A stretch of 64,000 bases of DNA from Octopus sinensis. Lineage: Eukaryota. Shown one piece after another: positions 1,470 through 38,200 of the stretch (positions are counted from its first letter, which is position 1; each line of letters starts with the position of its first letter). A program made the translations under genes and the position numbers. The DNA lies in NCBI RefSeq assembly GCF_006345805.1, contig NC_043004.1, positions 101,308,001-101,372,000 of the forward strand. Reading direction: 5' to 3'. Under the pieces are notes generated by a model. The model saw nothing but the letters and a program-made list of their open reading frames with translations. It had not been told where the DNA came from and did no database searches.

Positions 1470-1870
1470 ACAGACATGGGTGTGTGATTAGTAGTTTATT
1501 TCCCAACCACATGGTTCCAGGTTCAGTTTCACTGCATGACTCCCTAGGCAAGTGACTTCTTCTATAACCCCAGGCTGACTAAATCCTTGTGACTAGATGT
1601 GGTAGACAGAAACTGGAAGAAGCATATCATATATATATATATATATATGCATATATGTTTTTGTGTTTGTCCCTCACCACCCTTGAGAACTGATGTTGAT
1701 GTGTTTATGTCCCCTGTAACTTAGCAGTTTGGTAAAAGAAACCAAAAGAATAAATACCAAGCTTGGGAAAAAACTAAGTACTGGAATCGATTCATTCAAC
1801 TAAAAAACCTTTCGCGGAAGTGCTCCAGTATGGTCATAGTCTAATGACTAAAACGAGTAAAGTATAAAAG
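1470..1870 (+). mobile_element. tRNA-derived SINE, family A, diverged copy
   Basis: Collinear with the copy at 52864-53252 (ccaaccacatggttcc.ggttcag head; gtgctccag.atgg..gactaaaacgagtaaaag tail). Confidence 0.75.
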
Positions 1871-3106: not shown

Positions 3107-3400
3107 ATCATCATCATCATCATCATCGTTTAGCGTCCGTTTTCCATGCTGGCATGGGTTGGACGGTGCAACTGGGGTCTGGGAAGCCAGAAGGCTGCAC
3201 CAGGCCCAGTCTGATCTGGCAATGTTTCTACGGCTGGATGCCCTTCCTAACGCCAACCACTCCATGAGTGTAGTGAGTGCTTTTTACATGCCACCTGCAC
3301 AGGTGCCAGACAAGTCTGGCAAACGGCCACGGTCGGATGGTGCTTTTTACGTGCTACCGACACGGAGGCCAGGCGTGGCTGGCAACGGCCACGATCGGAT
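3107..3400 (-). mobile_element. RTE-tailed SINE-like element, family B
   Basis: (CAT)n, then cgtttagcgtccgttttccatgct..ggatgcccttcctaacgccaaccactcc, then about 2 internal monomers. Confidence 0.85.
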
Positions 3401-6092: not shown

Positions 6093-6173
6093 ACTCTGCC
6101 CCAACTTTTCCAAAATTTCAGGTGGCTAAAGTCGGTGATACAGTAGAGCTAATGTGCTCAAAAGAAGAGTTTG
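6093..6173 (+). CDS. ADGRL-like: Exon A: N-terminal part of Ig domain ([26 protein letters not shown])
   Basis: tttgttttctag acceptor, g|gtatgt donor, 81 nt, phase 1-1. VGDTVELMC is an Ig B-strand motif and is in frame with the next exon. Confidence 0.85.
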
Positions 6174-9100
6174 GTATGTTACATAAGGAAATTTTTCCAA
6201 TACTTTCTAATAATGTACATTATTTCATGATACCCCTTTTTTCCCCCCGCTTTTAATACTTAGATCCAAAGCTACTGCTTACTGACTGGAGAATGAACAA
6301 TTAAGACCCTATCTGTCAGTCTCTCAGTTAATCTAACTGAATTGGTAGGCAATAAAACAACAAAATTTCATGAGTGGTTTACTAGATAGCATTGCTTTGC
6401 TCAAAGCTTTAGCATTCAGATTATTCTATCAAATGTATCATCGTTTAACATCCGCTTTCCATGCTAGCATGGGTTGGACGATTTGACTGAGGACTGGCAA
6501 ACCAGATGGCTGCACCAGGCTCCAATCTGATCTGGCAGAATTTCTACAGCTGAATGCCCTTCCTAACGCCAACCACTCTGAGAGTGTAGTGGGTGCTTTT
6601 ACGTGCTACCGGCATGAGGGCCAGTCAGGCGGTACTGGCAACGGCCTCGCTCAAATGGTGTTTTTTACATGCCACCTGCACAGGAACCAGTCCAGTGGCC
6701 CTGGCAATGACCTCGCTCGAATGCTTTTTTCATGTGTCACCAGCACAAGTTCCAGTAAGGTGACACAGGTAACGATCACACTCGAATGGTGCTTTTTACA
6801 TGCCACCAGCACGGAAGCCGGTTAGCCACTCTGATGTTTATTTATTCATATAGTTTTGAATTAATCAGGCATTGCCTCATACTTTTGAGATTTCCGTGAT
6901 GTAATTGTTTATTTTTTAAAATGACATTGTAGGGTAGGTGTGAGAGGCTGCATCTGGTCAGTTTGAATATAAAACAGTTACAAAATTGGGGCTGGATATC
7001 ATCATCATTTAGCGTCCGCTTTCCATGCTAGCATGGGTTGGACGGTTCAACTGGGGTCTGTGAAGCCAGAAGGCTGCATCAGGCCTAGTCTGATCTGGCA
7101 GTGTTTCTACAGCTGGATGCCCTTCCTAATGCCAACCACTCCGTGAGTGTAGTGGGTGCTTTTTACGTGCCACCGGCACGGGGGCCAGGCGAGGCTGGCA
7201 TCCTCTATGTTCTGAAGAATAGGCAAAGGTTCTCTCTCTCAAAGTCAAAAACGTTGATCACACGTTGATTGATTGATACTGTTGAAATAAAACCAGACAG
7301 TTATTTTTGTAAAATTGAGGGATTGGTAATTTTAATTTAGAATCTTGTTGCCGGTGGAAATATTCCAAAGATAAATTTCATAAACTGTCCCTGGTGACAA
7401 TTCATTAATTGTTATTGTTTGTTTTCTTCCTTAGGTGACTCTGCTATACAGCTCCTAGCAAGAATCAAATGGTCTAAAGTTGATGGAAAAATACCGAAAA
7501 GAGCCATAAATGAAAGAAATAAACTCATTATACATAAAGCATCTTTGAGAGATGCTGGCATTTACTGCTGTACTATCACACTTGGAACAAAGTCTTTCCA
7601 GTCCAAAATTACACTCAATATCACATGTAAGTTTATCATTCACTCATTTACAATGCTGGGGAATTCTATTCTAAATCAATGGTTATCCCACCATTTGTAT
7701 CCTTCATGTTACACACAGTCATTTCAGTTCTATTATTCCATAGAAGTTATATGTGTATTCTTGCCCAAGCTGCAATAACAACAACAACAACGATACCAGG
7801 AATAATATTATTAAAATTAGTCAAGGTGTATCACTTGATTTATGACGATTTCTACCATTTTGATGTATCCACACATTTGTCTACGAGAAGTATTTTTGAT
7901 CGGTTCAATTGTTGGTACTTATTTCATCAACCTTGGTGGAATGAAAAACAAAATCGTTCCAAGTAGAATTTTAATTAAATCCTGACAATGTACCAAAACA
8001 GATTTACAATTAGAACAACCTGCTTATTTTTGACACAGGTAGAAGAGAACTATGCTCAGCAACATAAGTTCCTCCAAATTTAATTTCTGGTTATCCATAC
8101 ATGGTAGGTTTGCTATACACCATATTACTTGCTCATGCCCAGTCTTTCGTCATCTCATCTATCAGTAACCCGAGATCTTAACTTCATTGTTTCTATACTG
8201 TAACTACACTACACAAACAAAACATCACATTTTCCCCTCAGTATTCACAATCTGTTTGGATCAAATGTCTATATTAATACAGTCTCCTCTCCTAGGATTG
8301 AATTAAATAGAATGCTCCGAGCTTTAAACTAGTTACAGTAATCTCAAAACGCTTCAAGTCTTTAAGGTGACAGTAATATAGATAATTTGTATTTGGGGTG
8401 GTATATGTACTGAATGTTCACCGATAATGTTAGATAATATTGATGCTCATGGTAGTTTCTGGGTATACATCTATGCAGCATTAAAATTAAAATAGAGCAT
8501 TAGTTTTAAATCACTAATGATGGTATTAAAGAAAGTGTAATGGAAGAGGTATCTAACATCAATGGTTGAGGAAATAAATGTCTAAACTATAGATTATGAT
8601 GATGCATTGGGAATTAAAGATTATGAAGTGAAATCCATCTACAGCCATTGTTAATTATTTCTGTTTAAATTTATGTGGTCATTGTGAGTAACAGATTGAG
8701 ATTAAACTCGTCACAGCGATCATGATACGTTATACAAAGGCTGTGTTTTTTTTTTTCAATCATCCCTGCTGAGGAAATGACAGACACTACTTTTATGTAA
8801 TGTTTGGGAGGCATTTTAAATGTTTTAGGCCATGCTGTCTATTTTTATTCTATTCCTGTTGGATAGTCACTGCTTCAGTGTTCATTAGAGATGCGAGTTG
8901 TCTCCCTTGCATAATCTAAGGGAAATAACTTATTCTTTTCCACCAATATCTTTTCTTTTCCAGCGTCATCACATAGACCCCCACATATACCCGAAACTAC
9001 CACCGTTCCATCAACCACAACAACTACCACCACTAGAAGACCAATTCCTGTACATACTACAAAAAAGCATCCAGAACCGTCCACTGTAAGTTCCACGACA

Positions 9101-9583
9101 ACAACAAGAAGAACAACCACTACAACTCGATCAACAACAACAACAACCCCAAGACCAAAGACCACCAGCCGCAAGTACGATATCAGAACGAAAAGCTTCA
9201 CGACCCAATCTACGACACCATACAGAGTAATTTCTACAACATATCGAGCCAAAAAGTGCCCAGAGAAAACTGTTGATGGAATATGGTGGCCTACTGTGCA
9301 TTCTGGGGTTGTGAGTGAACGACCTTGCCCAGGGGTTAAAGTCGGTGAGCTATTACTCTTACTATACTCTCTCTTTTACTTGTTTCAGTTCATTTGACTG
9401 CGGCCATGCTGGAGCACCGCCTTTAGTCGAGCAAATCGACCCCGGGACTTATTCTTTGTAAGCCCAATACTTATTCTATCGGTCGCTTTTGCCAAACCGC
9501 TAAGTGACGGGGACGTAAATACACCAGCATCGGTTGTCAAGCAATGCTAGGGAGACGAACACAGACACACAAACAAACATACA

Positions 9584-9632
<49 letters not shown>

Positions 9633-12600
9633 GTCAGGCTTCTTTCAGTTTCCTTCTACCAAATCCACTCACAAGGCATTGGTCAGCCTGAGGCTATAGC
9701 AGAAGGCACTTGCCCAAGATGCCACGCAGTGGGACTGAACCCGGAACCATGTTGTTGGTTAGCAAGGTACTTACCAACAGCCACTCCTGCATCTATCATG
9801 AAAAAACTTCCATCCATTTTCCCAATTCAGCAGTCAAGTCATAATTACTAAATATTCTACTGTATATTAAGTTTCCAAATATGTCCACTCTAAATTTTCA
9901 TATGTCAATACAGCATTTCATTTTAAGCAACCAGCAATATAAAAACTATTGCAGCGTGGAAGGTGTTTATAAGCCATTTAAGAAACACACAAAACCGTTA
10001 GATTCACTTCAACATTTAAATTTAATTTGTCAAAATATTTTCAGCGCTTTGAGATGCAGTACGAAGCTTTGTCAGTGAACAGGTCGTGGATTTTAGTGAC
10101 GAAAATATTTTGACAAATTAAACTTAAATGTTGAAGTGAATCTAACGGTTTTTGTGTGTTTCTTAAATGGCTTATAAACACCTTCCATGCTGCAATTGTT
10201 TTCGTTCCAGCACACGATCTCAGATCAAGTCACTCGCTATGCAAGTACATCTCCGTAAATATAAAAACTGTCTGGTTGATTTAATGTGTTTCTTAACACA
10301 TTTACAATTACACTTGTTAAGTCTTTTATAAAATGCTAAAGTAGCCCACAGGATCTGTACCTTTTAGGATAGAAATGGCTACATCTCTAGTGCTACTTAC
10401 TATCAATTTGATCTTCTACTCAAAAACTGACTGTAAATTACACAACAGCAACTGGTGTGTTTTAAAAAATCCTTTCGTTATTTGTATAGGCTCACTTCAA
10501 CTTACGTTGGTGTTTGGTTCCAAGATGTACAACTTAACTTGAAAAATGATTTCACAGGAGAAAGACATTTTAAAAATGTTATATTTTATGTTTTTAATGT
10601 TTTGTACATATTTTCACATGTTTTATTTGATTTTCTACTTCAGTATTAGTTTTTAGTTGTTTTTTTTTGGGGTTTTTTTTTACACTTTTAAATATGTTCA
10701 CTGAATCTGATGTAAAATCAGATAAATCAACTGAAATTTAGGTATACTTTTTCCATTACTTTCTGTAGAACAAAGTGACATAAGTTTTTTAAAAAATCAG
10801 AAAAAATACCCCAACTCGAAACAACGTAAGTTGAGATATACCTGTATATTCATTTAGTGCAATTCATCACTTAAGCAGCAACAATGGGCAGTTTTCCAAA
10901 ATCATACCTGCTGTTCAGATAGATGAAAATCTCTATGGGAGTTATCGTTATTATGCATCAATATATTTACAAGAGTAACTAGTTTGTGAACTTTCGTATA
11001 CTACTGTGGACATTATGGTGGTAAAGCATATATGAGAATATCAATAGAATTAAATCTATCCACTGATCCTGAACAATTTGATGGAAAATAAATCAAATCT
11101 GGTTCTTTTTGCATCACATTGAAAGAGCTTTAAGAAGTTTTACACAACAGGAAAGAACGGTAAATATTTTAATGATGCTTGTAAAATATATATATATATA
11201 TATATATATATGTTCATATTTTTTTTTTAATTGTTTCTCATAGGAATCGCTAGATGGCAATGTGGGGAAAGTCATTGGATTCGACCAGCTCCTAACTACA
11301 CTGATTGTGTGGCACCATGGCTGCAAGACATCGCAAATAATGTACGTGACACGTTAAAATCTGATGTACGTGAAACTTCAGGTTTTTATTTAACTCTATC
11401 TAACATGCATGCATGCTCTTGCGCACAGACCCACTCACAAGCACGTGCTTTTCTCTCCTCAACACTAATATGTGAACACAACTACTAATTTCACCTAACC
11501 CATCATCTTGTACTAACATGGCCCAGTGGTTAGGGCAGCGGACTCGTGGTCGTAGAATCGCGGTTTCGATTCCCAGACCGGGCGTTGTTAGTGTTTATTG
11601 AGCGAAAACACCTAAAGCTCCACGAGGCTCCGGCAGGGATGGTGGTGATCCCTGCTGTACTCTTTCACAACAACTTTCTCTCACTCTTACTTCCTGTTTC
11701 TGTTGTACCTGTATTTCAAAAGGGCCGGCCTTGTCACTCTCTGTGTCACGCTGAATATCCCCGAGAACTACGTTAAGGGTACACGTGTCTGTGGAGTGCT
11801 CAGTCACTTACACGTTAATTTTACGAGCAGGCTGTTCCGTTGATCGGATCAACCAGAACCCTCGTCGTTCGTAACCGACAGAGTGCTTCCTCACTAACAT
11901 AAAAGACCCACTTTCTAATCCTGTTCAAGATACTCACTTTGATCCACTTTCTGTGCAAATGTGTATTTTTGTGTATAGAAACACACCTGTACTTACTCAG
12001 AATAACAACTCCTCTCCCAAACTCTTCTTCTTCTTTAACCTACTTGTCCACGCTAACACCTGCTTATACCTGTGTAACATAGATGCTTCTTTGCTTCTAC
12101 TTTCAAACTGTGCTTGAAAATCAACATTAACCCTTGTCAACCTTGTCCTTTCTATGCCTATCTGACCTGAGTTATGGAAACAGTAGTAATACTGATGTAT
12201 ACATACATGCAATCAGGTGTGCACACATATACATACATGCAAGCACATGTACACACACATGCAGGAGAGACAGACACAGATAAGTCATATTGCACTCACA
12301 TTCATTTAGTCTTAATTATATTTTTACTCTGTTCTTTTACTTGTTTCAGTCATTTGACTGTGGCCATGCTTGAGCACCACCTTTAGTCGAGCAAATCGAC
12401 CCCAGGACTTATTCTTTGTAAGCTTAGTACTTATTCTATCGGTCTCTTTTGCCGAACCGCTAAGTGACAGGGACGTAAACACACCAGCATCGGTTGTCAA
12501 GCAATGTTGGGGGAACAAACACAGATACACAAACATATACATATGCATATATACGATGGGCTTCTTTCAGTTTCCGCCTACCAAATCCACTTACAAGGCT

Positions 12601-15600
12601 TTGGTCAACCCAAGGCTATAGTAGAAAACACTTGCCCAAGGTGCCATGCAGTGGGACTGAACCCGGAACCATGTGGTTGGTAAAAAAGCTACTTACCACA
12701 CAGCCACTCCTACTTTTAATTTTAAATCGTTTAATTTTTTAACATTTTTTTTGTTTTTTAGGTAAATGGTACTCAACCTCAAACATCCATGGGCAACCTT
12801 TCAAAACATATGAAAGCTTCTTATCTTGGTTCTGGTGATATTATAAAAACTACGAAAGAGATTATTCCAGGCCTTACCAGAATACTACAGAGAGAAGTTG
12901 AGCATACGAAGCATAAAATGAAACTGGTGACAAATTTTACTGAGGTAATTAATCTTTTAACATTCAGATTACCCTGTCAAATATAATGCTCATTTATTCA
13001 CATTGTTTTGTGTTAATCATGTATTTTCTCTTAGCTTTGAGATTTCAATGATGTTATTAATTTTTAGAGTGACATTTTGGGGTAGGTGTGAGAGGCTAGA
13101 TCTGGTCAATTTGAGTATATAACAGGTAGAATATTTGAGCAGGATCTGGCCAGTTTAAATGCTTAAGGGTTAAACAATATTACCTTCTTACTTTTATATT
13201 GACTGCCATACAGGTATGTATGTATGATTAAGGTGGTGGACTGCTGAGAGTCATGCTTACAAACGTTATATCAAATAGGGTATTTGCATCTCAGCAAAGC
13301 ACATTACTTTATTCAACCTTAATATGCTTGAATGACAGTAAGATATAAAATAAGCAGCAGGCATAGACTATTATTACACTGCCCTTGTCCTCTATACTAA
13401 ACTATTGTATATTAGCCTCGGCGAGCTGGCAGAAATGTTAGCGTGCCGGGCGAAATGCTTAGCGGTTGTTCATCTGTCGTTACGTTCTGAGTTCAAATTC
13501 CGCTGAGGTCGACTTTGTCTTTCATCCTTTCGGGGTCGATAAATAAATTACCAGTTTCGCACTGGGGTCGATGTAATCAACTTAATCCCTTTGTCTGTCC
13601 TTGTTTGTCCCTTCTATGTTTAGCCCCTTGTGGGCAGTAAAGAAATATATTAGCCTGTACAACATCATATGCCGGAACAGTGGATCTTTGGATCATGTCT
13701 AGTCATTCAGCTGACTGCATATGTACATAATCAAGGTCTATTCAATCAGAACTACTTTTTTTAACTGCTTAGTTGGGGAGGAATGAGATGAGCAGTATGT
13801 TCAGTCTTTTATTTTTTTACGATGCCTCTGAGAGAACCAAGCAGTCTGAACCGATATTTCTGAATCATACAAGCAACAGGACATATCCCAGTTTCTGAGT
13901 AATATTAAGAGCCCGGACAGTGTCCAAGTCTCACAACAACAGAGCAAGACAGGGAGGAGACCTGCAGGCTTGAACCTTTGTCTTCCTACTTAGATATCAG
14001 TTTGGTTATGTTGCTTGCATTTAGAAGTTTGAACCTGCATATCATGTTTTCTTCTCTTGAGGATCCGGTTGGAGTGATGGCTCATGCTGGTTGGCCACAT
14101 GCTATATGGTCACGGTGGACAAGGAAGTATCTTACAGAGATGGGGACTGACTGGGACAACCCAAATACCAACAAACAGTGGATGCAGCAGTGCACTGCAA
14201 CAGCACATGCCTCCATTTCTTACCTCATCTCTAAGATGCCTGAATACTTAAAACACTGAGTCTACTAAAGGCACCCAATTAGCAAGTGATGGTTAAGATG
14301 ACCAATTACATCTGCCATCCATTAATTCAGAATGCAAAGAGCAGGAACAAAATATTGCACCGTTCATTGATCCATTGCTCCCAACTGTTAAATTTATTTT
14401 ATAACCCTAAAATGATGAAAGCTAAGTTGACTTTGGCGTGATTTGACCTCAGAATGCAGGGAGCTACAACAAAACACTACCAGGTATTTTGTTTTATGCT
14501 CTTATGACACTTCGATTTGTCACCTTTCGGATTACACAACAGTGGAAACAGGGTCCACTCCTTTCTCACTTTAATGGTTAGTAGTAGTACATTTCTCTAG
14601 ATGTATACAAAATGATGGAAATATCCAAGCATTGGACCAAATACTTTACAATGTTTACTTTCTTCCTCCTGTATTCTGAATTCAAATGCCTCATGGATCA
14701 ATCAGCCTTGCCTTTCATCTTCCTAGGGATGATAATATAATTCAGCATGCTCAGCAGTCAGTTAAATTAATCATACCCTAAATGAGTGAGTTGAAAAAAT
14801 GGTAGAGGTCTGGATCAAAGATACTTCAGCTTTTAGTTTCAATTCATTGTGTCCTGAGTTCAATTCCCATTAAAGTTAATCTTTCTGTTCATTCTTTTGA
14901 AATGTTTCTTGATTTTTTTTGATTTTTTTTTAATACCTTATATGGCTTTTCTTACTCTTGATTGATAAAGATGTTTCATGCTAAAAATTTTGACAACTAT
15001 TTACTCTACAGGGATTCCTCAGTGTCGGCAGTACTATGCTACAGGATAACCAGAAAGGAGGATGGGAAGAAATGCCACCATTTGAACGTTCCGGTGTAGC
15101 AACAAATTTGGCTTACACTATGAAGACAACAGCTTTTAAAATGGCTTCACTGCTGACCATGCAATCTCAAATAGAGATAGCTACAGATAATATTGGTAAG
15201 CACATTTTAAAAAAAGAAAAAAAGGAATAATCCATACAGTTAAACTCAAACATGGCAAGTGCAATAATGTCTATACTCTTTTACTTGTTTCAGTCATTTG
15301 ACTGCGGCCAAGCTGGAGCACTGCCTTTAGTCAAGCAAATCGACCCCGGGACTTATTCTTTGTAAGCCCAGTACTTATTCTATCGGTCTCTTTTGCCGAA
15401 CCGCTAAGTGACGGGGACGTAAACACACCAGCATCGGTTGTCAAGCAATGCTAGGGGGACAAACACAGACACACAAACATATACACACACACATATGTAT
15501 ATATATACATATATACGACAGGCTTCTTTCAGTTTCCGTCTACCAAATCCACTCACAAGGCATTGGTTGGCCCGAGGCTATAGCAGAAGACACTTGCCCA

Positions 15601-16405
15601 AGATGCCACGCAGTGGGACTGAACCCGGAACCATGTGGTTGGTTAGCAAGCTACTTACCACACAACCACTCCTGCATGAATTTTTGTAATTTCAATACAT
15701 GATTCCTGACTTCTTTTTGTACTGTCATTTGTGAGATATTCACTGATAATATAATATATTGCCTATAATATTAACCAGCTTAGAAAAATGATCACACGTG
15801 ATGAATGAAAACGGTATGATAGGCATCCGCTGACATATTCATGGGAGATGAATGCCCCTTTATGAAGATTTGAAATGTGTGATAAGCGCTGCTGTCGGAA
15901 GATAGTACCCTTAGAAGAGGACATAATAAGTTGTAAGGTGGGATCTTAGGACACAGATTTCATCATCATCATCGTTTAACGTCCGCTTTCCATGCTAGCA
16001 TGGGTTGGACGGTTCAACTGGGGTCTGGGAAGCTCGAAGGCTGCACCAGGCCAGTCAGATCTGGCAGTGTTTCTACAGCTGGATGCCCTTCCTAATGCCA
16101 ACCACTCCGTGAGTGTAGTGGGTGCTTTTTATGTGCCACCGACACAGGTGGAAGACGAGGCTGGCGAACGGATACGCTCGGACGGTGTTTTTTATGTGCC
16201 ACCGACACAGGTGGCAGACGAGGCTGGCGAACGGCCACGCTCGGATGGTGTTTTTTATGTGCCACCGACACAGGTGCCAGACGAGGCTGGCGAACGGCAA
16301 TGCTCGGATGGGGCCGAAGAAACGATGGAAGATTGAAACTAGTGACAATAAACTGTATGGCAGACCAATCCGTGCCACTGGAAATGCTGATGTTAAAATA
16401 TTGTT

Positions 16406-16448
<43 letters not shown>

Positions 16449-17830
16449 TCTGTCAACCTGTTTGTGTGTATGTGTTGGTATTTATTATATTTTGTTGTAA
16501 ATTACACATGAATTCATAAAAATTTTGTACTGTGATTCTGGGAGTGCAATTTCACCTAAATGTTCTTGCAGACCTCGAAATAAAGGTTGCAGAAATTACA
16601 CAGCACCTACAAGATGTTAAAATGCCTTCCAGTCAGTATTTTCGTTCTGTTGAAGACTACATTATTATACCAAAGGAAAATTTAATAAAATATTCTCACG
16701 GAGGTAAGTTTTCTTTTCATGTGTTTGTTTATATTTGTTTCTTTTACCTCATCTCATCTCTCTCTCATATATATATATAAATTCATATAAATAAGGATAA
16801 GATCGTTAATTTAAATATTGATCTTATCAAGTATCGCATGAGGAGTTATGGGCGGGCAATTTAAACTGGTCACGTGCATATATATATATATATATGTATA
16901 TGTATACGTTCGTATATATGTAAGTATTCGTATGTTATATGTATATATATATATATATATATGTGAATTTATGTTACTATCTGTGTATATTCCACTGATG
17001 AGGCAAAGCTTTCTTATGCAAAGCCAGAAATCCGGGATCTGGAATTATCCAGTAATTTTTTTGCTAGTTTATTTTGTCCTTTTGTCTTCTCTCCTAGTGC
17101 TGTATGAACTTTTAATGTGGTTTTAGAGTTAAGTTTTGGCTGCTGTTTCCAGCATGGTGGTATCTCTTGAATACCCTAAATTATAATATATACACACACA
17201 CACACATATATATATATAATATATATATATATATATTATCATCCTCATCATCTTCCATGTACGCATGGGTAGGACACTTGACAGGAGACATCCAGGTAGA
17301 AAATCTACCCAAGGCTACTGTATCTGTTTTGGCTGGGATTTTAGGCTGGATGCCCTTCCTAACACCAAAGGATAAGCAAGTTAGGCAAGTCGATATACAA
17401 AATATGTTTAATACATTAAATACAAAAAATATATTTAATATATTAAATATTCTTTGTATACTGACCTGCCTAACTTGCTTATCCTTATATTTATTCCTCT
17501 GCCTGCTCAAGTTTAAACCTCTTGAGCACTTTTAGGTGTATTCTATACAGAGAATATCCAATTCTTATCTATATTCTACCAATTATATACATTTTTCTTA
17601 TATATTTTTTGCAATTTACTTAATCATTGATATTTTATTGTTATTTTAATTTTAATATTTCTATTATATGTAATTTTCTAGATGATGTAATTTAATTGTT
17701 CATTTTGAATTGATAAAAGGTGTTTTTTTTCTAATTTTTTATATATATATTATATTGTGTGAAATTTGATTTAGTATTTCTAAATTGAATTTTTTTCCTG
17801 TAAGTTTGGATTTATATTCCCTCAAATAAT

Positions 17831-17892
<62 letters not shown>

Positions 17893-20800
17893 GTGTGTGT
17901 GTATACACGTGTGTGAGTGTATTAGTAAGATCTTACCTATATTCACATTTTCATGCTACTAAGGGTTACAGAGTAAATTATTTCAAGTGGGAATTTTAAG
18001 GTTTATTATATATATATCCCTTGCATCTTATTTGATGTCTTTTTTCTTTTTTTTTGCAGGTTTGTATCGTGCTGTCTATATGGTGTACAAGAACCTTGAT
18101 GATTTGCTCAACAATGAGTTAGATGAAGATGTAATGGAAACTGACAAAAAACAAGGAGCTGGTGATGGTGATGATGGTGGTGATGATGATGATGTGGTGG
18201 ACAAGAAAGAATCTGTCCATGTTGAAACACGTGTACACAACAAGAAATTCAAAGAATCCCCTCAGCTTGATCTCCAACTTCAAGAGACAGATAACGACCA
18301 AGAAACAGTTGAAACAGAAATACAGGCCCCACAGAAAATCAACACCCGAATTTTGTCTGTCACCATTGACAACCGACAAAATACACAGTTAGAAAAGCCA
18401 GTGGTTTTTGTATTGAAGCATCTCGTGGTAAGCATCTTAAGAAAAGTAGTTCTAACATTGGTTACAGTTTCATTCATAATGTGAAAAATCATGTTTTGTT
18501 TTGGCCAAATTATATACATTCCACGGTATCAGTGTATGTTGTGAAAGAAATATTAAGCATTACATATCGTTTATAGGTGCAGGTATGGCTGTGTGGTTAA
18601 GAAGTTTGCTTCCCAACCACATGGTTTCAGGTTCAATCCCTCTACATGACACCTTGGTTTTGACAGGTATCAGTCTCTCATAATCCTTTATATAGCACAC
18701 ACAACAACAGAGAAAACTGGCCGTCCTTGTTGTTGTATATATACTGTTTTATTGTGTGAATATAGTCAATGTGTTTGGTTACTGTCTTTCTGTATGCATG
18801 TGTCTTAAAGTTATAAGTCTTAATAACTTTACTGGGCGTCGAAAGGATCTCTTAAAATATTTCCTATTTCTTCTTTTCTAGGATCAAGACCCACGGAATG
18901 CCAAATGTGTATTTTGGAATTATACAGTGTAAGTTGCTCTGTTATAATAATAATGATAATAATAATGATAATGAAATTATTGTAAACAGTGCTCAGGTGC
19001 ACCACAACTTGTCAGAAAGTGCGTATAGAGTACATGCAGTAATGTACAAATGTTTGGAAAGCGAACAATGTATGAGTCAGATACATGCTTGTGTGTGTAT
19101 GGAGGGGAGAAAATCAGGTGTAGTGTTGGCGAATCTCAGGAAGCATGGAAGTTTTGAAGGATGCAGTGCTCCGACAACTAACAACTGATACCGGCAGTTT
19201 GTTCCATGCTTCGTGTGTACTTAGCTATTTTATTGATATATTTGTAAGGGCCATTTTTATGAATATGTTGTTGTGTTATTGTAAATGTAAATATGTGTTT
19301 ACTGGTATTGTATCGATGATTCTCTACATATGTATCTCTCTAAAGAAAGTTGAACTGAAATTCGGGCAACTAAACCTTTGGAACATTTAAATTTCATTAT
19401 CTCAATATTGAATCAATTTCGGAATTAACCACATAAGGATTCGTTCGTCTTCAGTTGAGCTTACGAGAGAATATTAGTTGCCCGAATTTCAGTTCAACTT
19501 TCTGTAGCAAGTAGATTAAATGTGGAATATCAGTATATTGGCTTTAGAATAATCTTCTTTAGCCCTTGCTTATAAGATATTTATAATTTTTAACCATAAA
19601 GGTTCTTTTAATATACTGCCACAATTCCTGATGGAGTTTTTTTCTGTAGAGAAAAAGGCTTCATCCTTTTCAATATGTATCTCTCTATGTATGTGCTTTA
19701 ATGTCTTCTCTTTATTCTATAATTTTGCTGAGCTTTCTGCTTTTCTTCGACAGGCGAAACATGGATGGCCGTTGGTCCAGAAAAGGCTGTCAGCTTTTGT
19801 CCACCAATATGACCCACACAGCTTGTAAATGTAACCATCTAACTAGCTTTGCTGTACTTATGGACTTCATTGGCACCAAGGTGACATCATCAGTTATAAT
19901 ATTGTTGTTTTCTAAGTGGTTTTCATTCTGCCTCTTTATATTCTGACTTTAGTGGAGGCGCAATGGCCCAGTGGTTAGGTCAGCGGACTCGCGGTCATAG
20001 GATCGCGGTTTCGATTCCCAAACCGGGCGTTGTGAGTGTTTATTGAGCGAAAACACCTAAAAGCTCCACGAGGCTCCGGCAGGGGATGGTGGTGATCCCT
20101 GCTGTACTCTTTCACCACAACTTTCTCTCACTCTTACTTCCTGTTTCTGTTGTACCTGTATTTCAAAGGGCTGGCCTTGTCACTCTCTGTGTCACGCTGA
20201 ATATCCCCGAGAACTACATTAAGAGTACACGTGTCTGTGGAGTGCTCAGCCACTTACACGTTAATTTCACGAGCAGGCTCTTCCGTTGATTCGGATCAGC
20301 CGGAACCCTCGTCGTCGTATCCGACAGAGTGCTTCCATTCCATCCATTCTGACTTTAGAAAGCCATGGTCATCTTTAAAATAAAGTATTAATTGACTGTA
20401 ATCAATTTAATTGACTAACCTCCTTCTTCGAATTTCCCACCTCGTGCCCAGGTTAAAATTATTATAGAGCTTTGGAGTGTCGCACAAAATGACTTGCAAT
20501 ATCTCTTCCTGCTCGTTACATACTGTATTCAAATCCTGCTGAGATCAGCTTAGCCATTCATCCCATTATAATTATAATTATCGTTATTATTATTGAGGTG
20601 GGAAGCTGGCAGAATTGTTAGCATGCTGGATGAAATGTTTAGCAGTATTTCACCTGTCTCTACGTTTAAAGTTCAAATTCTGCCAAGGTCGACTTTGCCT
20701 TTCATCCTTGTGGGGTCAATAAGTTGAGTACCAGTGAAATACTAGGGTCAGTGTAATTGACTAGTCCTCTCCACACAAATCTGAGGCCTTGTGCCTCCAG

Positions 20801-22965
20801 CAGAAAGGATTATTATTAAGGTGGCCTGCTGGCAGAATTGTTAGCACACTGGACAAAATGCTTAATGGTATTTCACCTGTTGCTACATTCTGAGTTCAAA
20901 TTCCTCCAAGGTCAACTTTGCTTTTCATCCTTTCAGGGTTGATAAATCAAGTACCAGTGAAACACTGGAGTTGATGTAATCGACTTGTACCTTCCTGCCA
21001 AATTTCAGGCCTTGTGCCTTTAGTAGAAAGGATTATTACTATTAGGGTGGAATGCTGGTAAAATCTTTAGTACATTAAGAAAAATTCTTAGCATTTCTTG
21101 CAGCTGTTTACATACATTCTAACTTTAAATTGTCATGGTCAACTTTGTTTATTGGATTTTTAATATCTTTTTCTTAATTAAAATTCCTCCAATGTCAATA
21201 GTATTAGTACCAGTAATATAATATACCCTATTTTAACGTGTATAAGGAACCCTTTTTTGTCAAAAATTGGATTAAAAAAATATGGGGTTTTCTTATACAT
21301 GGTTAGTGTTATAATCCCTTACAAAACTGTTTTTCCAAATTTTAAGCCCCCAAAATTAAGGCTTCCTTATACATGTCAAAATATGGTACTGTGTTATTTC
21401 AGTCACCTTTATGAAGAGTTCGTGACTTGGGTTTAACTTTTAATAGTAACTAGCAGTATCGCCCGGCGTTGCTCGGGTTTGTAAGGGAAATAACTATATA
21501 AGCATTTTTAGAGAGTTATAGCCAAAAAATAGCAAAAAATGCATTAAAAATGGAAAAAAAATGATGGTAACTTTTTTTAAAAATCGTTGACTCATCGTAG
21601 ACATTTTTAGAGAGTTACTTCCCTTATATAATAGCGAAAAAAATGCATTAAAATGGAAAAAAAATGATGGTAAATTTTTTTTTAAATCGTAGACACATTG
21701 TAGACGCGTGCTAATACCCAGAAGGGCTCGATATGAATCACGACTATAAGATACCCGGTTTTGGTTAAACTGCACAGCAAAATGTGGGAGTAGTTAGGAA
21801 TCTAAATCATAGGAGACAGACACACAACTTCACTTTTATATATCAAGATTATAAAAATTTATTCTTGTCATTGAAAAAGAAAAAAAAAAAGAGAACAATA
21901 CCAAACACTGATATTGTTCTTTTCAATAAGTTAATTGTCTTGTTCTTAAGTTATACTGGGATAAATAGTAAAATTCATGCAGTATAACAGTTTAACTTCT
22001 GGATTGCACTTCGTCTTTCAGTCTGTACATGAAATATATAACACGACTATGTAAAAATTGAACTGAGTTTTGTTGTTTATCAAACCAAACTAATATTACT
22101 GTTGTTTTAGTTGTTATTGTTGCAGACATATCCGTTGTTGCTATGTATGTTTGTTATGATTGTTGTGGTTGTGACTCTTGTTGCTGTTGTTGTAATTGCA
22201 GTTGTTGTAGTTATAGCTGTAGTGGTGGTGGTAGTAGTAATTTTTGTTGTTGTTTCTCTCTTTAATGTTATCAAAGCTGGCAGAAACAGCACGCCGGGGG
22301 GCAAAATGCGTGGCCGTATTTCGTCTGCCGTTACGTTCTGAGTTCAAATTCCACCGAGGTCGACTTTGCCTTTCATCCTTTCGGGGTCGATTAAATAAAG
22401 TACCAGTTACGCACTGGGGTCGATGTAATCGACTTAATCCCTTTGTCTGTCCTTGTTTGTCCCCTCTATGTTTAGCCCTTTGTGGGCAGTAAAGAAATAT
22501 ACATTAGCAGTATCCACACCATCATCACCATCACTACCATCATCATCGTCATTGCAATTATCTTTGTAATTAATACGACCAGCACCATTCTCACTAATAT
22601 TTTTCTTTATATTTTTCTTTTTCCAGCCCCCTGGCCCACATGTTGATGCCCTGTACATTATCACTTTCGTTGGCTGTATTCTCTCCATTATCGGCCTTTT
22701 CTGCTGTTTTGTAACGTTCAGCTACTTTAGGTAAGTTGATCCCTCTCAATCCACTTCTTGTATGGCTTCTTTTCTCAGTAGTGTTAACCCACCGAATCAC
22801 CTGCTTTAACCACCTCACGATCTTCTCCCCCAACACTAATTAAAAAGTTGTATCTCTACTTCTAAAATGTTCACTTAAATCCTTCCCTCATCCTTCTCCT
22901 GTCCTATCCCTCATGACCATGCACAAAACAATAAAGAATATATATATATATATATGTATATATAT

Positions 22966-35200: not shown

Positions 35201-38200
35201 CCTCGCCTGGCCCCCGTGCTGGTGGCATGTAAAAAGCACCATCCGACCGTGGCCGTTTGCCACCCCCATCTGGCAGCTGTGCCGGTGGCAAGTAAAAAAC
35301 ACCCACTACACTCACTGAGTGGTTTGCGTTAGGAAGGGCATCCAGCCATAGAAACACTGCCAGATCAGACTGGGCCTGATGCAGCCTTCTGGCTTCCCAG
35401 ACCCCAGTCGAACCGTCCAACCCATGCTAGCATGGAAAGCGGACACTAAATGATGATGATGATGTATATATGCATGTGGGTTTGTGTTTCTTTAAGCAAT
35501 ATGAAGAAAGAAAAAGAAATAAACCAGTTCTTTCAATCAAAGTCCCTTGTAATAATTGTTCTACCCAGGTACACAGACAATCATTATAAATACAGCAAAC
35601 TAGTGTTGACCCATTGGAAACCTGTAACCAATGATGCTATTGTTCATAAATCATATAATCTTCCAGACTACTAAACTCATTTTTAGAGTTTATAAAACAT
35701 AATATATACCCTACACACACCTTATTCAGTCAGTTCTAATTACCGATTGTCATCAGGAATAAAATGCCTGATGTCAGTTGAGATTTAGTGTATATATAAA
35801 TATCATAAATATATATTCTGAATATACAGTAAACAGTCTGCAAAATTCTGATCTGGATGACCACAACTAATCTTGGATATTTAAGTTTATGTGCTCCTTT
35901 GGTTATAACCTAATAAATCCACCCATGAAGTTCACATTATGAAAATCCAAGACAGTCCATACTTTCTGCTTATTATAACAGAATTCAGACTCACTAAGAC
36001 TACTAGTTAATCTAGGATTTGGGGTAATTGTGATATTCTGATGATCTTTGCTCTTGCAAATTGTGTTAATTAATGGTCAACATTTTCAGACAAATGTCTC
36101 AGAAGGAAGACCTAGGGGTAGACCAAGAATGAGACGTTTGGAGAATATCTATTGTCTCTGTTGGTTTTCTTTGGAAATTCAGCAGGAAAGTCTAATGACG
36201 GTTGCTTCTGATAGGACCTTATTGATGAGGTGCCTGAAGACTATATCGTCCATGACCTTTTCAGGAATAGTGGACAGAGAAGATGGTTGGATGGCTGTCT
36301 CCACAGAGTGGGCCACTTCAGTGATATGTTAAGAAAATGATGTATCAAGTTCTTTAGAATCTGCAGATCTCTTCCTTTTGAACGGCAGACAATTTCTAGT
36401 TAACTAAACACTTTAAAATTTCGTATACTGGTAGAATGTGTCAAAATAAAACTTTTTTCTCTTGGCTTTCTTGAGAAAATTGTAATTTGTTTGTTTAACG
36501 TAGTTTAATTTTTCGAATTTTAACCAATCCTATGCTCTCTTTTGAGCTAAAATCATTTGCTGCATCTAAAACTGAGACAACATCCTGTAACTAACCCTAA
36601 CCCTAAATTTTTTTTTCTTAATTGTTAAATTAATTTAATTGTTACACATGTAAAAAAACTAAAGCAATAGAATTAAATTAATTTAACAATTAAGAAAAAA
36701 AAATTTATGGTTAGGGGGGAGGTTTAGGGTTAGTTACAGGATGTTGTCTCAGTTTTAGACACAGCAAATGATTTTAGTTGAATGGAGGTAATCGATTGGT
36801 TAAAATTACTGAAATGCTCAGATTTTCAGACGAAATATCTTACAAACCATAAAATTTTCTCAATAAAGCCAAGAAAAAAATGATGTTTCATAAACACATT
36901 CTACCAGTATACGAAGTTTAAAAGTGTTTAGTTACATGGAAATTGTGTTGACATCTGCCGTTCAAAAGGAAAAGATCCGAATCTGCTTTATAACTCATTA
37001 ATAACTTGAGTCTCCCTCCCTCTCTCCACTTGTTACGTGTCTCTCTGCCATATTCCATAACAGTTACCTTCTTTTGAGGACTGGGAGTAGATGGTGCTGC
37101 CTTACATCTATGGCAGCATTTAGAAAGGAGGAGCCTGTTCAGCCATTACTTAAGTAGATTTTTTTTTTTTTTTTTTTGCAGTATAAAGACATGGGACACT
37201 CAGAGACATCTTGTTGTTCTAAGCCTTGTCTATGGCTCATATTCTCTTATAGTTCTTGACTCCTAGTTGATATCACAGTTGTCAGAATATCACTTTGTAT
37301 CTCAAGTAACCTGCTGAGATTTTTTTTTGCATCCTATCTTAGCTCATTAAAGAAGCAACCATATTATTCTTGGCAGTTTTAATTGATACCTCTTTTGTTG
37401 ATTTAGTGTACACTCATTTCTACAGATCTTTGACTCCTTTTCATAAAAAACTGATTTTCTCTTGCTATAGTAAAAACAGGCAGGGACAGAAAAAATAAAA
37501 TTCCACTGTTCTTTTTCTGTATTTTTCCTTGGAAATTTTCTCAATGACTAATAAAGATAAACTGGTAATGAAAGACCATGGCTTCTGAAATATCTACTAG
37601 AATGGATTTATTTATAGGTGCTGAGATCTTGGTCACTTTTTTTATTTTATGTTTTTAACCTAACTCTTCCATTTGGTTCAATTTCTTACATGACTATTCC
37701 AAACTGTTCCTATCTTTTCACTTAACAAACCCAACCATCAAACCAAAACATAGTCTGAAAGTATGGATTCAGACGCAAATTAACCTAATACTACAACCTT
37801 ATGTAAATGGAACAAAACCAGCAGATAAATAAGAACATTAAAAAAAAAACAATTAATAAAGAAAAAAAGAAACAATCTTCATCTAATTTACATCTCCATA
37901 ATTTTTCTCTCTGTCTGCAGGAATTTGCAAAGTAGTCGAAACACTATCCATAAAAACCTGGTTCTCTGTTTGATGTTAGCTGAAATTACATTTCTAGCCG
38001 GTATACACCAGGTCAAAAATAAAGTAAGTATTTCTTAGGGTGCTTTATTTTTTTTTTTTACTTCCTTTTACCTTTAAGGATGTGGACAGTCTTATAAGCA
38101 AGGAGAATCTTGAAGTATGCTAATAGGGTTTTATATTAAAAATTTTTATCACTGGTTTTGAGATGATCTACTGGTGTATGGAGTAGGAAATACCTTTGGG

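What the first reader, a model, noticed from the sequence alone, without database searches (positions are those of the whole stretch)
6093..11341. Latrophilin-type 7TM/GAIN core with an Ig I-set domain and mucin stalk where RBL/olfactomedin usually sit
Seen: exons 6093-6173 and 7435-7626 splice into a complete Ig fold (VELMC, IKWSK, DAGIYCC). It is followed by about 95 aa of Thr/Ser/Pro stalk and a four-Cys HormR, all in frame with a GAIN-7TM carrying latrophilin signatures. Known: canonical latrophilins (ADGRL1-3, Cirl, LAT-1) use a rhamnose-binding lectin domain, plus olfactomedin in vertebrates, for teneurin/FLRT binding; Ig domains are typical of other aGPCR groups such as ADGRA and ADGRF5. 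Inference: this is a lineage-specific domain-shuffled latrophilin with a different ligand. Both Ig exons are phase 1-1, consistent with exon shuffling.
Basis: partly seen in the sequence, partly recalled or inferred. Interest (0 to 1): 0.72.

Follow-up and report, generated by a model that had tools for sequence, protein, structure and literature searches.

The report
Octopus latrophilin gene with extra Ig
This is the middle part of the already annotated octopus latrophilin gene (RefSeq "ADGRL2"): the Ig domain is real, but it is an extra module between a retained rhamnose-binding lectin domain (encoded upstream of the window) and the stalk, so the find is tidy but largely ordinary.

Summary
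Seventeen + strand exons, all bounded by AG/GT, splice into one open frame. My 792-aa model from 16 of them is 100% identical, without gaps, to residues 126-917 of RefSeq XP_029639842.1, [quoted passage not shown]. The seventeenth is an alternative cassette.

The two Ig exons (6093-6173 and 7435-7626) are both phase 1-1 and encode an I-set Ig. They are followed by a 96-aa stalk (61% Thr/Ser/Pro), a four-Cys HormR, GAIN/GPS (HL|TSFAVLM) and TM1-TM5.

The interpretation needs one main correction. The full protein starts with a signal peptide and an RBL (SUEL lectin) domain at residues 40-122, so the Ig does not replace the RBL. It sits between RBL and stalk, where chordate latrophilins carry olfactomedin. 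The RBL exons and the TM6-to-C-tail exons lie outside the window.

The 7TM scores best against ADGRL3 and ADGRL2. It groups with RBL-bearing lophotrochozoan latrophilins.

The Ig is shared by Octopus, Argonauta and cuttlefish-type orthologues. It was absent from 43 other close representatives. In a scallop, the RBL/stalk junction is flanked by phase-1 introns, which fits exon insertion.

A 2019 review already notes Ig domains in invertebrate latrophilins. Novelty is low.

The parts
6093..6173 (+). Ig exon a (81 nt, phase 1-1): N-terminal part of the I-set domain, with the B-strand Cys (VELMC)
   Evidence: AG/GT borders and frame. Identical to P0195 residues 126-152. tblastn hit.
7435..7626 (+). 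Ig exon b (192 nt, phase 1-1): IKWSK ... DAGIYCC ... KITLNIT, the C-terminal two thirds of the I-set domain
   Evidence: Pfam I-set and Ig_2. PDB contactin and Robo Ig matches. 58% identical to the cuttlefish-type Ig.
8964..9344 (+). Exon (381 nt, phase 1-1) encoding the 96-aa Thr/Ser/Pro stalk and the N-terminal half of HormR ([14 protein letters not shown]...RPCPGVKVG)
   Evidence: 61% T/S/P. HRM Pfam. The scallop gene uses the same arrangement of stalk plus HormR N-half in one exon.
11244..11341 (+). HormR C-terminal half ([11 protein letters not shown]...[14 protein letters not shown]), ending at the proximal donor
   Evidence: Alignment to the ADGRL3 and latrophilin-1 HormR.
11342..11365 (+). 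Alternative 24-nt exon extension (VRDTLKSD). It uses a second copy of the donor GTACGTGA and is present in isoform X1
   Evidence: Alignment of isoforms X1 and X2. Window sequence aat|GTACGTGAcacgttaaaatctgat|GTACGTGA.
12762..12944 (+). GAIN subdomain A exon
   Evidence: Pfam GAIN, 82 bits over model residues 257-438. 100% tblastn match.
15012..15195 (+). GAIN subdomain A exon
16572..16703 (+). GAIN exon
18060..18427 (+). GAIN subdomain B exon with an acidic low-complexity insert ([30 protein letters not shown])
   Evidence: The insert varies between cephalopods.
18882..18928 (+). GPS micro-exon carrying the first Cys and Trp ([15 protein letters not shown])
   Evidence: Pfam GPS, 63.8 bits.
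19754..19880 (+). GPS exon with the cleavage site and tethered agonist: ...CKCNHL|[13 protein letters not shown]
   Evidence: Alignment to ADGRL3 ...CSCNHLTNFAVLM.
22627..22730 (+). TM1 exon
   Evidence: 7tm_2, 186 bits.
37921..38023 (+). ICL1/TM2 exon
45209..45359 (+). TM3 exon, used as bait for the exhaustive search
47514..47580 (+). TM4 exon
48150..48216 (+). ECL2/TM5 exon ([23 protein letters not shown])
48735..48829 (+). TM5/ICL3 exon ([31 protein letters not shown]), with a phase-2 donor
60106..60180 (+). Alternative ICL3 cassette exon (75 nt, phase 2-2): (N)[25 protein letters not shown]. Present in isoforms X1 and X2, skipped in X3
   Evidence: AG/GT borders. Isoform comparison. tblastn. 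24 of 25 residues identical to the insert of a cuttlefish-type transcript isoform, P0175.

Best explanation
The window holds the middle 55 kb of the single canonical latrophilin orthologue of an octopus. It is Octopus sinensis or a near-identical genome, and RefSeq calls the gene 'adhesion G protein-coupled receptor L2'.

The full receptor reads: signal peptide, RBL (SUEL lectin), one I-set Ig, an O-glycosylation-type Thr/Ser/Pro stalk, HormR, GAIN/GPS, 7TM and a long C-tail. The window encodes everything from the Ig to ICL3. The RBL exons lie upstream of the window, and TM6, TM7 and the tail lie downstream.

The Ig is an extra module shared by coleoid cephalopods. It is encoded by two symmetric phase-1 exons in what is a phase-1 intron position between RBL and stalk in a scallop orthologue. 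The simplest history is therefore exon insertion into that intron before octopods and decapodiforms split.

Inferred mode of action, none of it tested here:
- The receptor works like other latrophilins.
- The RBL-Ig head, held away from the membrane by the mucin-like stalk, binds partners on other cells or in the matrix.
- The GAIN domain cleaves itself at HL|T.
- Force or ligand engagement exposes the tethered agonist [11 protein letters not shown] to the 7TM, which signals through G proteins.
- An alternatively spliced 25-aa ICL3 cassette probably tunes the coupling.
- The Ig most likely adds a second protein-binding surface next to the RBL, at the place where chordates use olfactomedin.
For: Shown here:
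- Sixteen AG/GT exons give one 792-aa frame. It is 792/792 identical to P0195 residues 126-917. P0195 is XP_029639842.1, O. sinensis ADGRL2 isoform X2.
- Pfam on P0195: SUEL_Lectin 40-122 (65 bits), Ig_2 and I-set 131-214, HRM 313-366, GAIN, GPS, 7tm_2.
- tblastn of isoform X1 covers only residues about 118-951 in the window, so both ends of the gene are outside it.
- PDB: ADGRL3 344 bits over HormR to TM5. For 7TM-only chains: L3 210, L2 205, L4 158, E5 138, D1 about 108-145 bits.
- TM1-5 ranking: cuttlefish-type 365 bits, RBL-bearing bivalve and nemertean latrophilins about 260, ADGRE2-like 136, ADGRG2 46.
- NJ tree: the window pairs with P0022 at 100% bootstrap, inside an 18-member lophotrochozoan group of which 10 have a detected RBL.
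- The Ig is present in O. sinensis, O. bimaculoides, Argonauta and two decapodiform clusters. Octopus-cuttlefish identity is 58% for the Ig, against 65% for RBL, 65% for HormR and 55% for GAIN.
- Decapodiform contigs of 4.4-6.7 kb from assembled public sequencing runs (P0022, P0172, P0175, P0193, P0316, P0320) encode the unbroken RBL-Ig-stalk-HormR-...-tail ORF of 1309-1334 aa. They must be spliced transcripts.
- Of 44 long representatives closest by TM3, 30 have RBL and only the cephalopod one has Ig. phmmer with the Ig finds only the cephalopod cluster.
- Scallop gene L001: RBL exon 2 ends TAT G|gtaagc (phase 1). A 39-nt 1-1 micro-exon follows, then the stalk exon with a phase-1 acceptor.

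From the literature:
- The lectin domain binds teneurins and OLF binds FLRTs in vertebrates, and OLF is absent outside chordates (PMC10084454; PMC6422961).
Against: - The RBL exons were not seen in this window. Their presence rests on a public protein that is 100% identical over 792 aa, not on genomic sequence I could read; the genomic look-up of P0195 failed.
- Deep nodes of the 7TM tree are weakly supported, with bootstraps of 2-50, because only 208 columns (TM1-5) were available.
- The I-set score is at or just below Pfam's cut-off in the octopus protein (21.4-24.9 bits). The Argonauta and cuttlefish-type Ig domains pass it (27.3 and 25.2).
- No binding, cleavage or signalling data exist for this protein. 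The functional role of the Ig is inference.
- Nautilus and most other mollusc classes were not sampled, so 'coleoid-specific' is only a bracket on the timing.
Confidence: 0.9

Rival explanations
1. This is a lineage-specific, domain-shuffled latrophilin paralogue in which Ig plus mucin stalk replace the RBL (and olfactomedin) head, so the receptor has swapped its canonical ligands for others.
For: No RBL motif or SUEL-like sequence is present anywhere in the window (regex; tblastn). Mollusc 'ADGRL2/3-like' paralogues with C-type lectin or VWA heads and no RBL do exist.
Against: The reading frame is open at 6093, a phase-1 acceptor, so upstream exons must exist. The RefSeq product identical to the window model has RBL at residues 40-122, immediately before the Ig. 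Argonauta and both decapodiform orthologues have the same RBL-Ig order. By TM1-5 score the gene groups with the RBL-bearing latrophilins (about 260 bits), not with the Lectin_C or VWA paralogues (185-215 bits).
Confidence: 0.04
2. The Ig exons are an optional cassette. Because both are symmetric (phase 1-1), the gene could make both RBL-Ig-stalk and RBL-stalk isoforms, the latter resembling the bivalve form. Splicing would then switch the ligand repertoire, much as the alternatively spliced site between RBL and OLF modulates teneurin binding in mammals.
For: Both Ig exons, and the stalk exon after them, are phase 1-1, so skipping keeps the frame. The gene demonstrably uses alternative splicing elsewhere: an alternative donor at 11341/11365 and the ICL3 cassette at 60106-60180. 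An alternatively spliced exon between RBL and OLF modulates TEN2 binding in mammals (PMC6422961).
Against: None of the six RefSeq isoforms of O. sinensis and O. bimaculoides (1333-1360 aa) lacks the 91-aa Ig. Their length differences are fully explained by the 8-aa and 25-aa events. All full-length decapodiform transcript contigs also contain the Ig.
Confidence: 0.1
3. The Ig is an annotation or assembly artefact: exons of a neighbouring or nested IgSF gene wrongly joined to the latrophilin model.
For: The review warns that most invertebrate latrophilin-like models come from genome predictions without mRNA support (PMC6422961). The Pfam I-set score is borderline in octopus.
Against: The frame is continuous, with matching phases across all junctions. 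The same RBL-Ig-stalk order is found in independent transcript assemblies from decapodiforms. The Ig is conserved at about the same level as the neighbouring domains across coleoids. No start or stop signals bracket the Ig exons.
Confidence: 0.02

Closest known systems
Octopus sinensis ADGRL2 (XP_029639839-43) and O. bimaculoides ADGRL2 / UniProt 'Latrophilin Cirl' A0A0L8FYA8
   Same: It is the same gene. The window model is 792/792 identical to O. sinensis isoform X2 residues 126-917. The O. bimaculoides Ig is 92% identical and its 7TM about 100%. The alternative donor and the ICL3 cassette seen in the window correspond to isoforms X1, X2 and X3.
   Different: Nothing differs in sequence. The window lacks the exons for residues 1-125 (signal peptide and RBL) and from 952 to the end (TM6, TM7 and tail). 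The Pfam list precomputed for P0195 does not show an Ig family because the score is borderline.
Vertebrate latrophilins ADGRL1-3 (for example PDB 8jmt, 7wy5, 7sf7, 4dlq)
   Same: RBL at the N-terminus, a Ser/Thr-rich linker, a four-Cys HormR, GAIN with an HLT|(N/S)FAVLM site, and a closely similar 7TM. ADGRL3 scores 344 bits, with most TM1-5 positions identical in the printed alignment.
   Different: Vertebrates have an olfactomedin domain between RBL and stalk, whereas the octopus has one Ig there. The Pfam 'Latrophilin' C-terminal domain (PF02354) is not detected in the octopus protein; it is found in only 5 of 44 representatives. FLRT, the OLF ligand, has been reported only in vertebrates (PMC10084454).
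Bivalve, nemertean and gastropod latrophilins (Ylistrum P0197, Mizuhopecten P0064, Mytilus P0035/P0187, Pinctada P0045, Tubulanus P0025, Physella P0199)
   Same: RBL-stalk-HormR-GAIN-7TM order. Similar exon plan in the scallop: RBL in two exons, stalk plus HormR N-half in one exon, then HormR C-half. Phase-1 introns at the RBL/stalk junction. TM1-5 scores of about 240-270 bits against the window.
   Different: No Ig between RBL and stalk. Mytilus instead has a laminin-EGF insert.
Ig-bearing aGPCRs of other groups (ADGRA2/3, ADGRF5) and mollusc 'ADGRL-like' paralogues with Lectin_C or VWA heads
   Same: An Ig, or another adhesion module, sits N-terminal to HormR/GAIN. This illustrates the general modularity of aGPCR ectodomains.
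   Different: The 7TM relationships differ. ADGRF1 scores only about 82 bits and the ADGRG chains 38-117 bits, against 210 for ADGRL3. The Lectin_C and VWA paralogues lack RBL and are only 30-36% identical over HormR to TM5. No ADGRA chain appeared among the 60 PDB matches listed.

Membership tests
Latrophilin (ADGRL1-3 / Cirl / LAT-1 type adhesion GPCR) | N-terminal rhamnose-binding (SUEL) lectin domain | tested here: met
   Not encoded in the window. It is present at residues 40-122 (SUEL_Lectin, 65.1 bits, cut-off 31.4) of P0195, whose residues 126-917 are identical to the window model. It is also present in the Argonauta and cuttlefish-type orthologues.
Latrophilin (ADGRL1-3 / Cirl / LAT-1 type adhesion GPCR) | Hormone-receptor motif (HormR/HRM) directly before GAIN | tested here: met
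   HRM scores 28.6 bits in the fragment (cut-off 26.2) and 23-24 bits in the whole protein. There are four Cys. It aligns with the ADGRL3 and latrophilin-1 HormR.
Latrophilin (ADGRL1-3 / Cirl / LAT-1 type adhesion GPCR) | GAIN domain with a GPS cleavage motif (HL|T) and a tethered agonist T-x-F-A-V-L-M | tested here: met
   GAIN 82 bits, GPS 63.8 bits. The sequence is CKCNHL|[11 protein letters not shown], against ADGRL3 CSCNHLTNFAVLM. The cleavage itself cannot be tested with these tools.
Latrophilin (ADGRL1-3 / Cirl / LAT-1 type adhesion GPCR) | 7TM domain groups with ADGRL rather than with other aGPCR groups | tested here: met
   PDB 7TM-only scores: L3 210, L2 205, L4 158, E5 138, D1 108-145, F1 about 82. 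The NJ tree places the window among RBL-bearing latrophilins, next to the chordate OLF-bearing group, with the ADGRE2-like sequence outside. Only TM1-5 could be used and deep bootstraps are low.
Latrophilin (ADGRL1-3 / Cirl / LAT-1 type adhesion GPCR) | Olfactomedin domain between RBL and HormR (chordate latrophilins only) | tested here: not met
   No OLF hit in the window model or in P0195. OLF is present in 4 of 44 representatives. It is absent from all non-chordate latrophilins according to PMC6422961, so it does not define the wider family.
Latrophilin (ADGRL1-3 / Cirl / LAT-1 type adhesion GPCR) | Pfam 'Latrophilin' cytoplasmic C-terminal region (PF02354) | tested here: not met
   No PF02354 hit in P0195 or P0194. 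It is found in 5 of 44 representatives. The region is encoded outside the window.
Latrophilin (ADGRL1-3 / Cirl / LAT-1 type adhesion GPCR) | Binding of teneurin through the lectin domain | not testable with these tools
   No interaction data exist. The review doubts that latrophilin-teneurin binding is conserved in invertebrates (PMC6422961).
Immunoglobulin I-set domain | About 90 residues with a B-strand Cys, a C-strand Trp and an F-strand D-x-G-x-Y-x-C, matching I-set profiles | tested here: met
   VELMC, IKWSK and DAGIYCC are present. I-set scores 24.9 bits in the fragment (cut-off 23.7) but 21.4-22.3 in the whole protein. The orthologous Argonauta Ig scores 27.3 and the cuttlefish-type Ig 25.2. 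PDB contactin-5 E = 6.6e-8. The fold was not modelled, because spliced sequences are not accepted by the structure tool.
Ig-bearing aGPCR groups ADGRA / ADGRF5 | 7TM of the ADGRA or ADGRF type | tested here: not met
   ADGRF1 chains score 76-82 bits, against 210 for ADGRL3. No ADGRA chain is among the 60 PDB matches listed.

The most novel reading that the evidence does not exclude
The Ig is a cephalopod (at least coleoid) innovation. It was inserted by exon shuffling into the phase-1 intron between the RBL and stalk exons of the single canonical latrophilin gene. This is the same junction at which chordates independently acquired olfactomedin. On this reading, two lineages with large, complex brains each converted a one-headed latrophilin (RBL only) into a two-headed one. 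The octopus Ig would provide a second, lineage-specific ligand site that allows coincidence binding, analogous to teneurin plus FLRT in mammals.
Probability: 0.3. Interest if true: 0.5.

Novelty: already known. Interest (0 to 1): 0.22.

Why it matters
As it stands, the result is a clean re-derivation of an annotated gene, and it corrects a tempting misreading. A window that cuts off the 5' exons made a canonical RBL-bearing latrophilin look like an RBL-less, domain-swapped one.

The residual interest is evolutionary. The one latrophilin orthologue of coleoid cephalopods carries an extra, conserved Ig at the position where chordates carry the FLRT-binding olfactomedin domain, and the intron phases suggest how it got there. 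If the Ig binds a partner of its own, it would be a simple entry point for studying synaptic adhesion codes in an independently evolved complex nervous system. The conserved ICL3 cassette offers a second, testable handle on the tuning of G-protein coupling.

Tried and rejected
- The word-index search with Ig + masked stalk + HormR returned nothing. With HormR to TM5 it returned only distant mollusc paralogues and vertebrate ADGRLs, and no cephalopods. This briefly suggested an unannotated lineage. That was wrong: the index simply missed the cephalopod clusters, which appeared when P0022 was used as query.
For the same reason I did not attempt structure prediction of the spliced Ig.
I replaced it with a motif scan and with tblastn of the true N-terminus. 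Neither found RBL coding sequence in the window.
- I searched for TM6 and TM7 in 48.8-64 kb by ORF listing, motif scan and tblastn. They are absent, so they lie downstream of the window.
- The genomic look-up of P0195 found no record, so I could not read the octopus RBL exons. The scallop orthologue was used for the intron-phase comparison instead.
- The supplementary FASTA of Scholz et al. 2019, wanted for reference 7TMs, is not held.
- The first tree attempt timed out. I redid it with a lighter NJ and bootstrap.
- Rfam and tRNA scans of the window found nothing.
- Pfam scans of five intronic ORFs found nothing.

Full report
**What is in the sequence**

The region is AT-rich eukaryotic DNA. 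Spliced, they read [44 protein letters not shown]…[27 protein letters not shown].

Pfam on the N-terminal fragment gives I-set 24.9 bits (cut-off 23.7), Ig_2 26.3 and HRM 28.6 (cut-off 26.2). The best solved-structure matches of the Ig are Ig domains of contactin-5, contactin-2, Robo1/2 and LRIG1.

The next exon, 8964-9344, is again phase 1-1. It encodes a 96-aa stalk with 36 Thr, 12 Ser and 11 Pro (61%) and the first half of a four-Cys HormR. Exon 11244-11341 completes HormR.

**The whole gene model**

Following the frame downstream, I placed twelve more exons by hand:
- GAIN: 12762-12944, 15012-15195, 16572-16703, 18060-18427.
- GPS: 18882-18928 and 19754-19880, with CKCNHL|[11 protein letters not shown].
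- 7TM: TM1 22627-22730, TM2 37921-38023, TM3 45209-45359, TM4 47514-47580, TM5 and ICL3 48150-48216 and 48735-48829.

All sixteen exons have AG/GT borders and give one 792-aa frame without a stop. Pfam on this model gives 7tm_2 186 bits (profile positions 3-198 of 250, that is TM1-TM5), GAIN 82 and GPS 64.

The frame is open at both ends. Position 6093 is a phase-1 acceptor, and 48829 is a phase-2 donor in ICL3. I found no TM6 or TM7 coding sequence in 48.8-64 kb.

**Which kind of receptor**

Against solved structures, the HormR-to-TM5 part matches ADGRL3 best, at 344 bits. For chains that contain only the 7TM the order is ADGRL3 210, ADGRL2 205, ADGRL4 158, ADGRE5 138, ADGRD1 108-145 and ADGRF1 about 82.

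**Finding the orthologues**

Two word-index searches missed all close relatives. The exhaustive search does not accept spliced sequences, so I used the TM3 exon alone as bait.

One hit, P0022 (1309 aa), is 88% identical in TM3 and 58% identical to the whole model. It shares a 90%-identity cluster with GenBank 'ADGRL1 [Acanthosepion (Sepia) pharaonis]' and with contigs of 4.8-6.7 kb assembled from public sequencing runs that encode the entire ORF. Contigs of that size carrying the full ORF can only be spliced transcripts. Its Pfam architecture is SUEL_Lectin 33-115, I-set 121-209, HRM, GAIN, GPS, 7tm_2. In the orthologue, an RBL domain therefore precedes the Ig.

Searching with P0022 then returned 'ADGRL2-like [Argonauta hians]' (P0194) and 'ADGRL2 isoform X2 [Octopus sinensis]' (P0195, XP_029639842.1). 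My model is 792/792 identical, without gaps, to P0195 residues 126-917.

This does two things. It validates every splice site I chose, and it identifies the window as part of an annotated RefSeq gene. P0195 has SUEL_Lectin at residues 40-122, followed at once by …HYICEKD|SAPTFPKF…, the Ig. tblastn of the longest isoform (1360 aa) onto the window covers only residues about 118-951. The signal peptide and RBL exons are thus upstream of the window, and TM6, TM7 and the C-tail are downstream.

**Correction of the interpretation**

The Ig does not stand where the RBL usually sits. It is an additional module between a retained RBL and the stalk, which is the position of olfactomedin in chordate latrophilins.

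The gene is the canonical latrophilin orthologue, not a head-swapped paralogue. Its TM1-5 region scores about 260 bits against RBL-bearing bivalve and nemertean latrophilins. It scores 185-215 against the RBL-less Lectin_C and VWA mollusc paralogues, 136 against an ADGRE2-like protein and 46 against ADGRG2.

In a neighbour-joining tree of TM1-5 (208 columns, 100 bootstraps) the window pairs with P0022 at 100%. It sits in an 18-member lophotrochozoan group, ten of whose members have a detected RBL (support 50), beside the chordate OLF-bearing group. Deeper nodes are weak.

**How restricted is the Ig**

- Of 44 long representatives closest by TM3, 30 have SUEL_Lectin, 33 HRM, 4 OLF, 3 Lectin_C, 2 fn3 and 2 EGF_CA. 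Only the cephalopod one has an Ig family.
- phmmer with the window Ig or the cuttlefish-type Ig finds only the cephalopod cluster among all fetched proteins.
- The precomputed Pfam lists for the bivalve and gastropod latrophilins show no Ig. Pfam run here on the scallop protein P0197 finds none either.
- Within coleoids the Ig is conserved about as well as its neighbours. Octopus versus cuttlefish-type identity is 58% for the Ig, against 65% for RBL, 65% for HormR and 55% for GAIN.

The Ig is therefore a constrained, functional part of the protein, and it predates the octopod-decapodiform split. Nautilus was not sampled.

**Exon shuffling**

In the scallop Ylistrum balloti, whose latrophilin has no Ig, I fetched the gene (L001) and mapped the exons.
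- The second RBL exon ends …TGT TAT G|gtaagc, which is phase 1.
- A 39-nt phase 1-1 micro-exon follows.
- The stalk/HormR exon then begins after a phase-1 acceptor.

The octopus RBL/Ig boundary (…E K G|AC…) falls one codon away from the scallop position and is also phase 1. Two symmetric phase-1 Ig exons dropped into a phase-1 intron keep the frame. This is what the exon-shuffling model requires, although it is compatibility rather than proof. From my own knowledge, and not tested here, a two-exon Ig domain is also typical of neural IgCAM genes.

**Mechanism**

The domain order, the GPS motif and the tethered-agonist sequence are shown. The rest is inferred from established aGPCR biology.

The receptor should work like other latrophilins. 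An adhesive head (RBL plus Ig) sits on a mucin-like stalk. The GAIN domain cleaves itself at HL|T. The TSFAVLM… peptide acts as tethered agonist on the 7TM. In vertebrates the lectin domain binds teneurins and OLF binds FLRTs, and FLRTs have been reported only in vertebrates (PMC10084454). OLF is absent outside chordates (PMC6422961). The most likely role of the Ig is a second protein-binding surface, but a spacer role cannot be excluded.

**Alternative splicing seen in the window**

- Exon 11244-11341 has a second donor 24 nt downstream, with the donor sequence GTACGTGA duplicated. It adds VRDTLKSD between HormR and GAIN in isoform X1.
- A 75-nt phase 2-2 cassette at 60106-60180 inserts (N)[25 protein letters not shown] into ICL3. 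It is present in isoforms X1 and X2 and skipped in X3. It is 24/25 identical to the insert of a cuttlefish-type transcript isoform, P0175.
- No annotated isoform skips the Ig exons.

**Novelty**

The gene is annotated in RefSeq for O. sinensis and O. bimaculoides (the latter is 'Latrophilin Cirl' in UniProt) and in GenBank for Argonauta and Sepia.

Schöneberg and Prömel (2019) surveyed latrophilin N-termini in a species set that includes O. bimaculoides. [quoted passage not shown]

I found no paper that singles out the cephalopod RBL-Ig arrangement or its intron phases. That is a detail within known territory. I rate the finding as already known and of low interest. A modest open possibility remains: that the Ig insertion is a cephalopod innovation convergent with the chordate gain of olfactomedin.

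Noticed in passing
window 60106-60180 (+): A 75-nt alternatively spliced cassette exon in the third intracellular loop, encoding (N)[25 protein letters not shown]. It lies 11 kb after the TM5 exon. It is included in octopus isoforms X1 and X2 and skipped in X3. It is 24/25 identical to the insert of a cuttlefish-type transcript isoform (P0175), so this ICL3 splice choice is conserved across coleoids and probably affects G-protein coupling.
   Followed up: partly
window 11339-11373 (+): Tandem alternative 5' splice sites with a duplicated donor, aat|GTACGTGA…gat|GTACGTGA, 24 nt apart. The distal one adds VRDTLKSD between HormR and GAIN (isoform X1 against X2, in both Octopus species).
   Followed up: yes
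L001 7089-7127 (scallop Ylistrum balloti latrophilin gene): A 39-nt phase 1-1 micro-exon (GPPTTTSTSTTTI) lies between the RBL exons and the stalk exon. This is the same junction where cephalopods carry the Ig exons and where mammals have an alternatively spliced exon between RBL and OLF.
   Followed up: partly
window 18130-18215 (+), inside the GAIN exon 18060-18427: An acidic low-complexity insert ([30 protein letters not shown]) in a GAIN loop. It differs in length and sequence between Octopus, Argonauta and the cuttlefish-type orthologue.
   Followed up: no
window 1477-1784, 3115-3400, 6437-6747, 6998-7200, 9371-9792, 12333-12711, 13424-13649, 15274-15676, 15961-16311, 20604-20992, 22299-22499, 34038-34212, 34882-35464, 46735-46900, 52865-53252, 55925-56323, 56773-57002: Several families of dispersed repeats 150-420 bp long, with 4-8 copies each within the window on both strands. 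All are in introns or in the upstream region, including the intron that splits the Ig domain. They look like SINE-type elements. No tRNA or Rfam match was found.
   Followed up: partly
window 9942-10202 and 19340-19507: Foldback elements in introns. The first has two adjoining inverted-repeat pairs of 53 and 52 nt (96-98% complementary) forming a hairpin of about 260 bp. The second has 34-nt arms (97%) separated by 100 nt. Both resemble MITEs.
   Followed up: partly
window 43375-43632 (+); 27543-27866 (+) and 53983-54351 (-): Intronic ORF fragments. The first reads …[25 protein letters not shown]…, which from memory resembles the C-terminus of mariner-type transposases. The other two are copies of one repeat in opposite orientations. 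Pfam found nothing for any of them.
   Followed up: partly
The search for homologous proteins: The word-index protein search missed the octopus, Argonauta and Sepia proteins when queried with the window's own spliced sequence, which is 100% identical to one of them over 792 aa. It found them only when queried with P0022. An empty result from that tool should not be read as absence of close relatives.
   Followed up: yes
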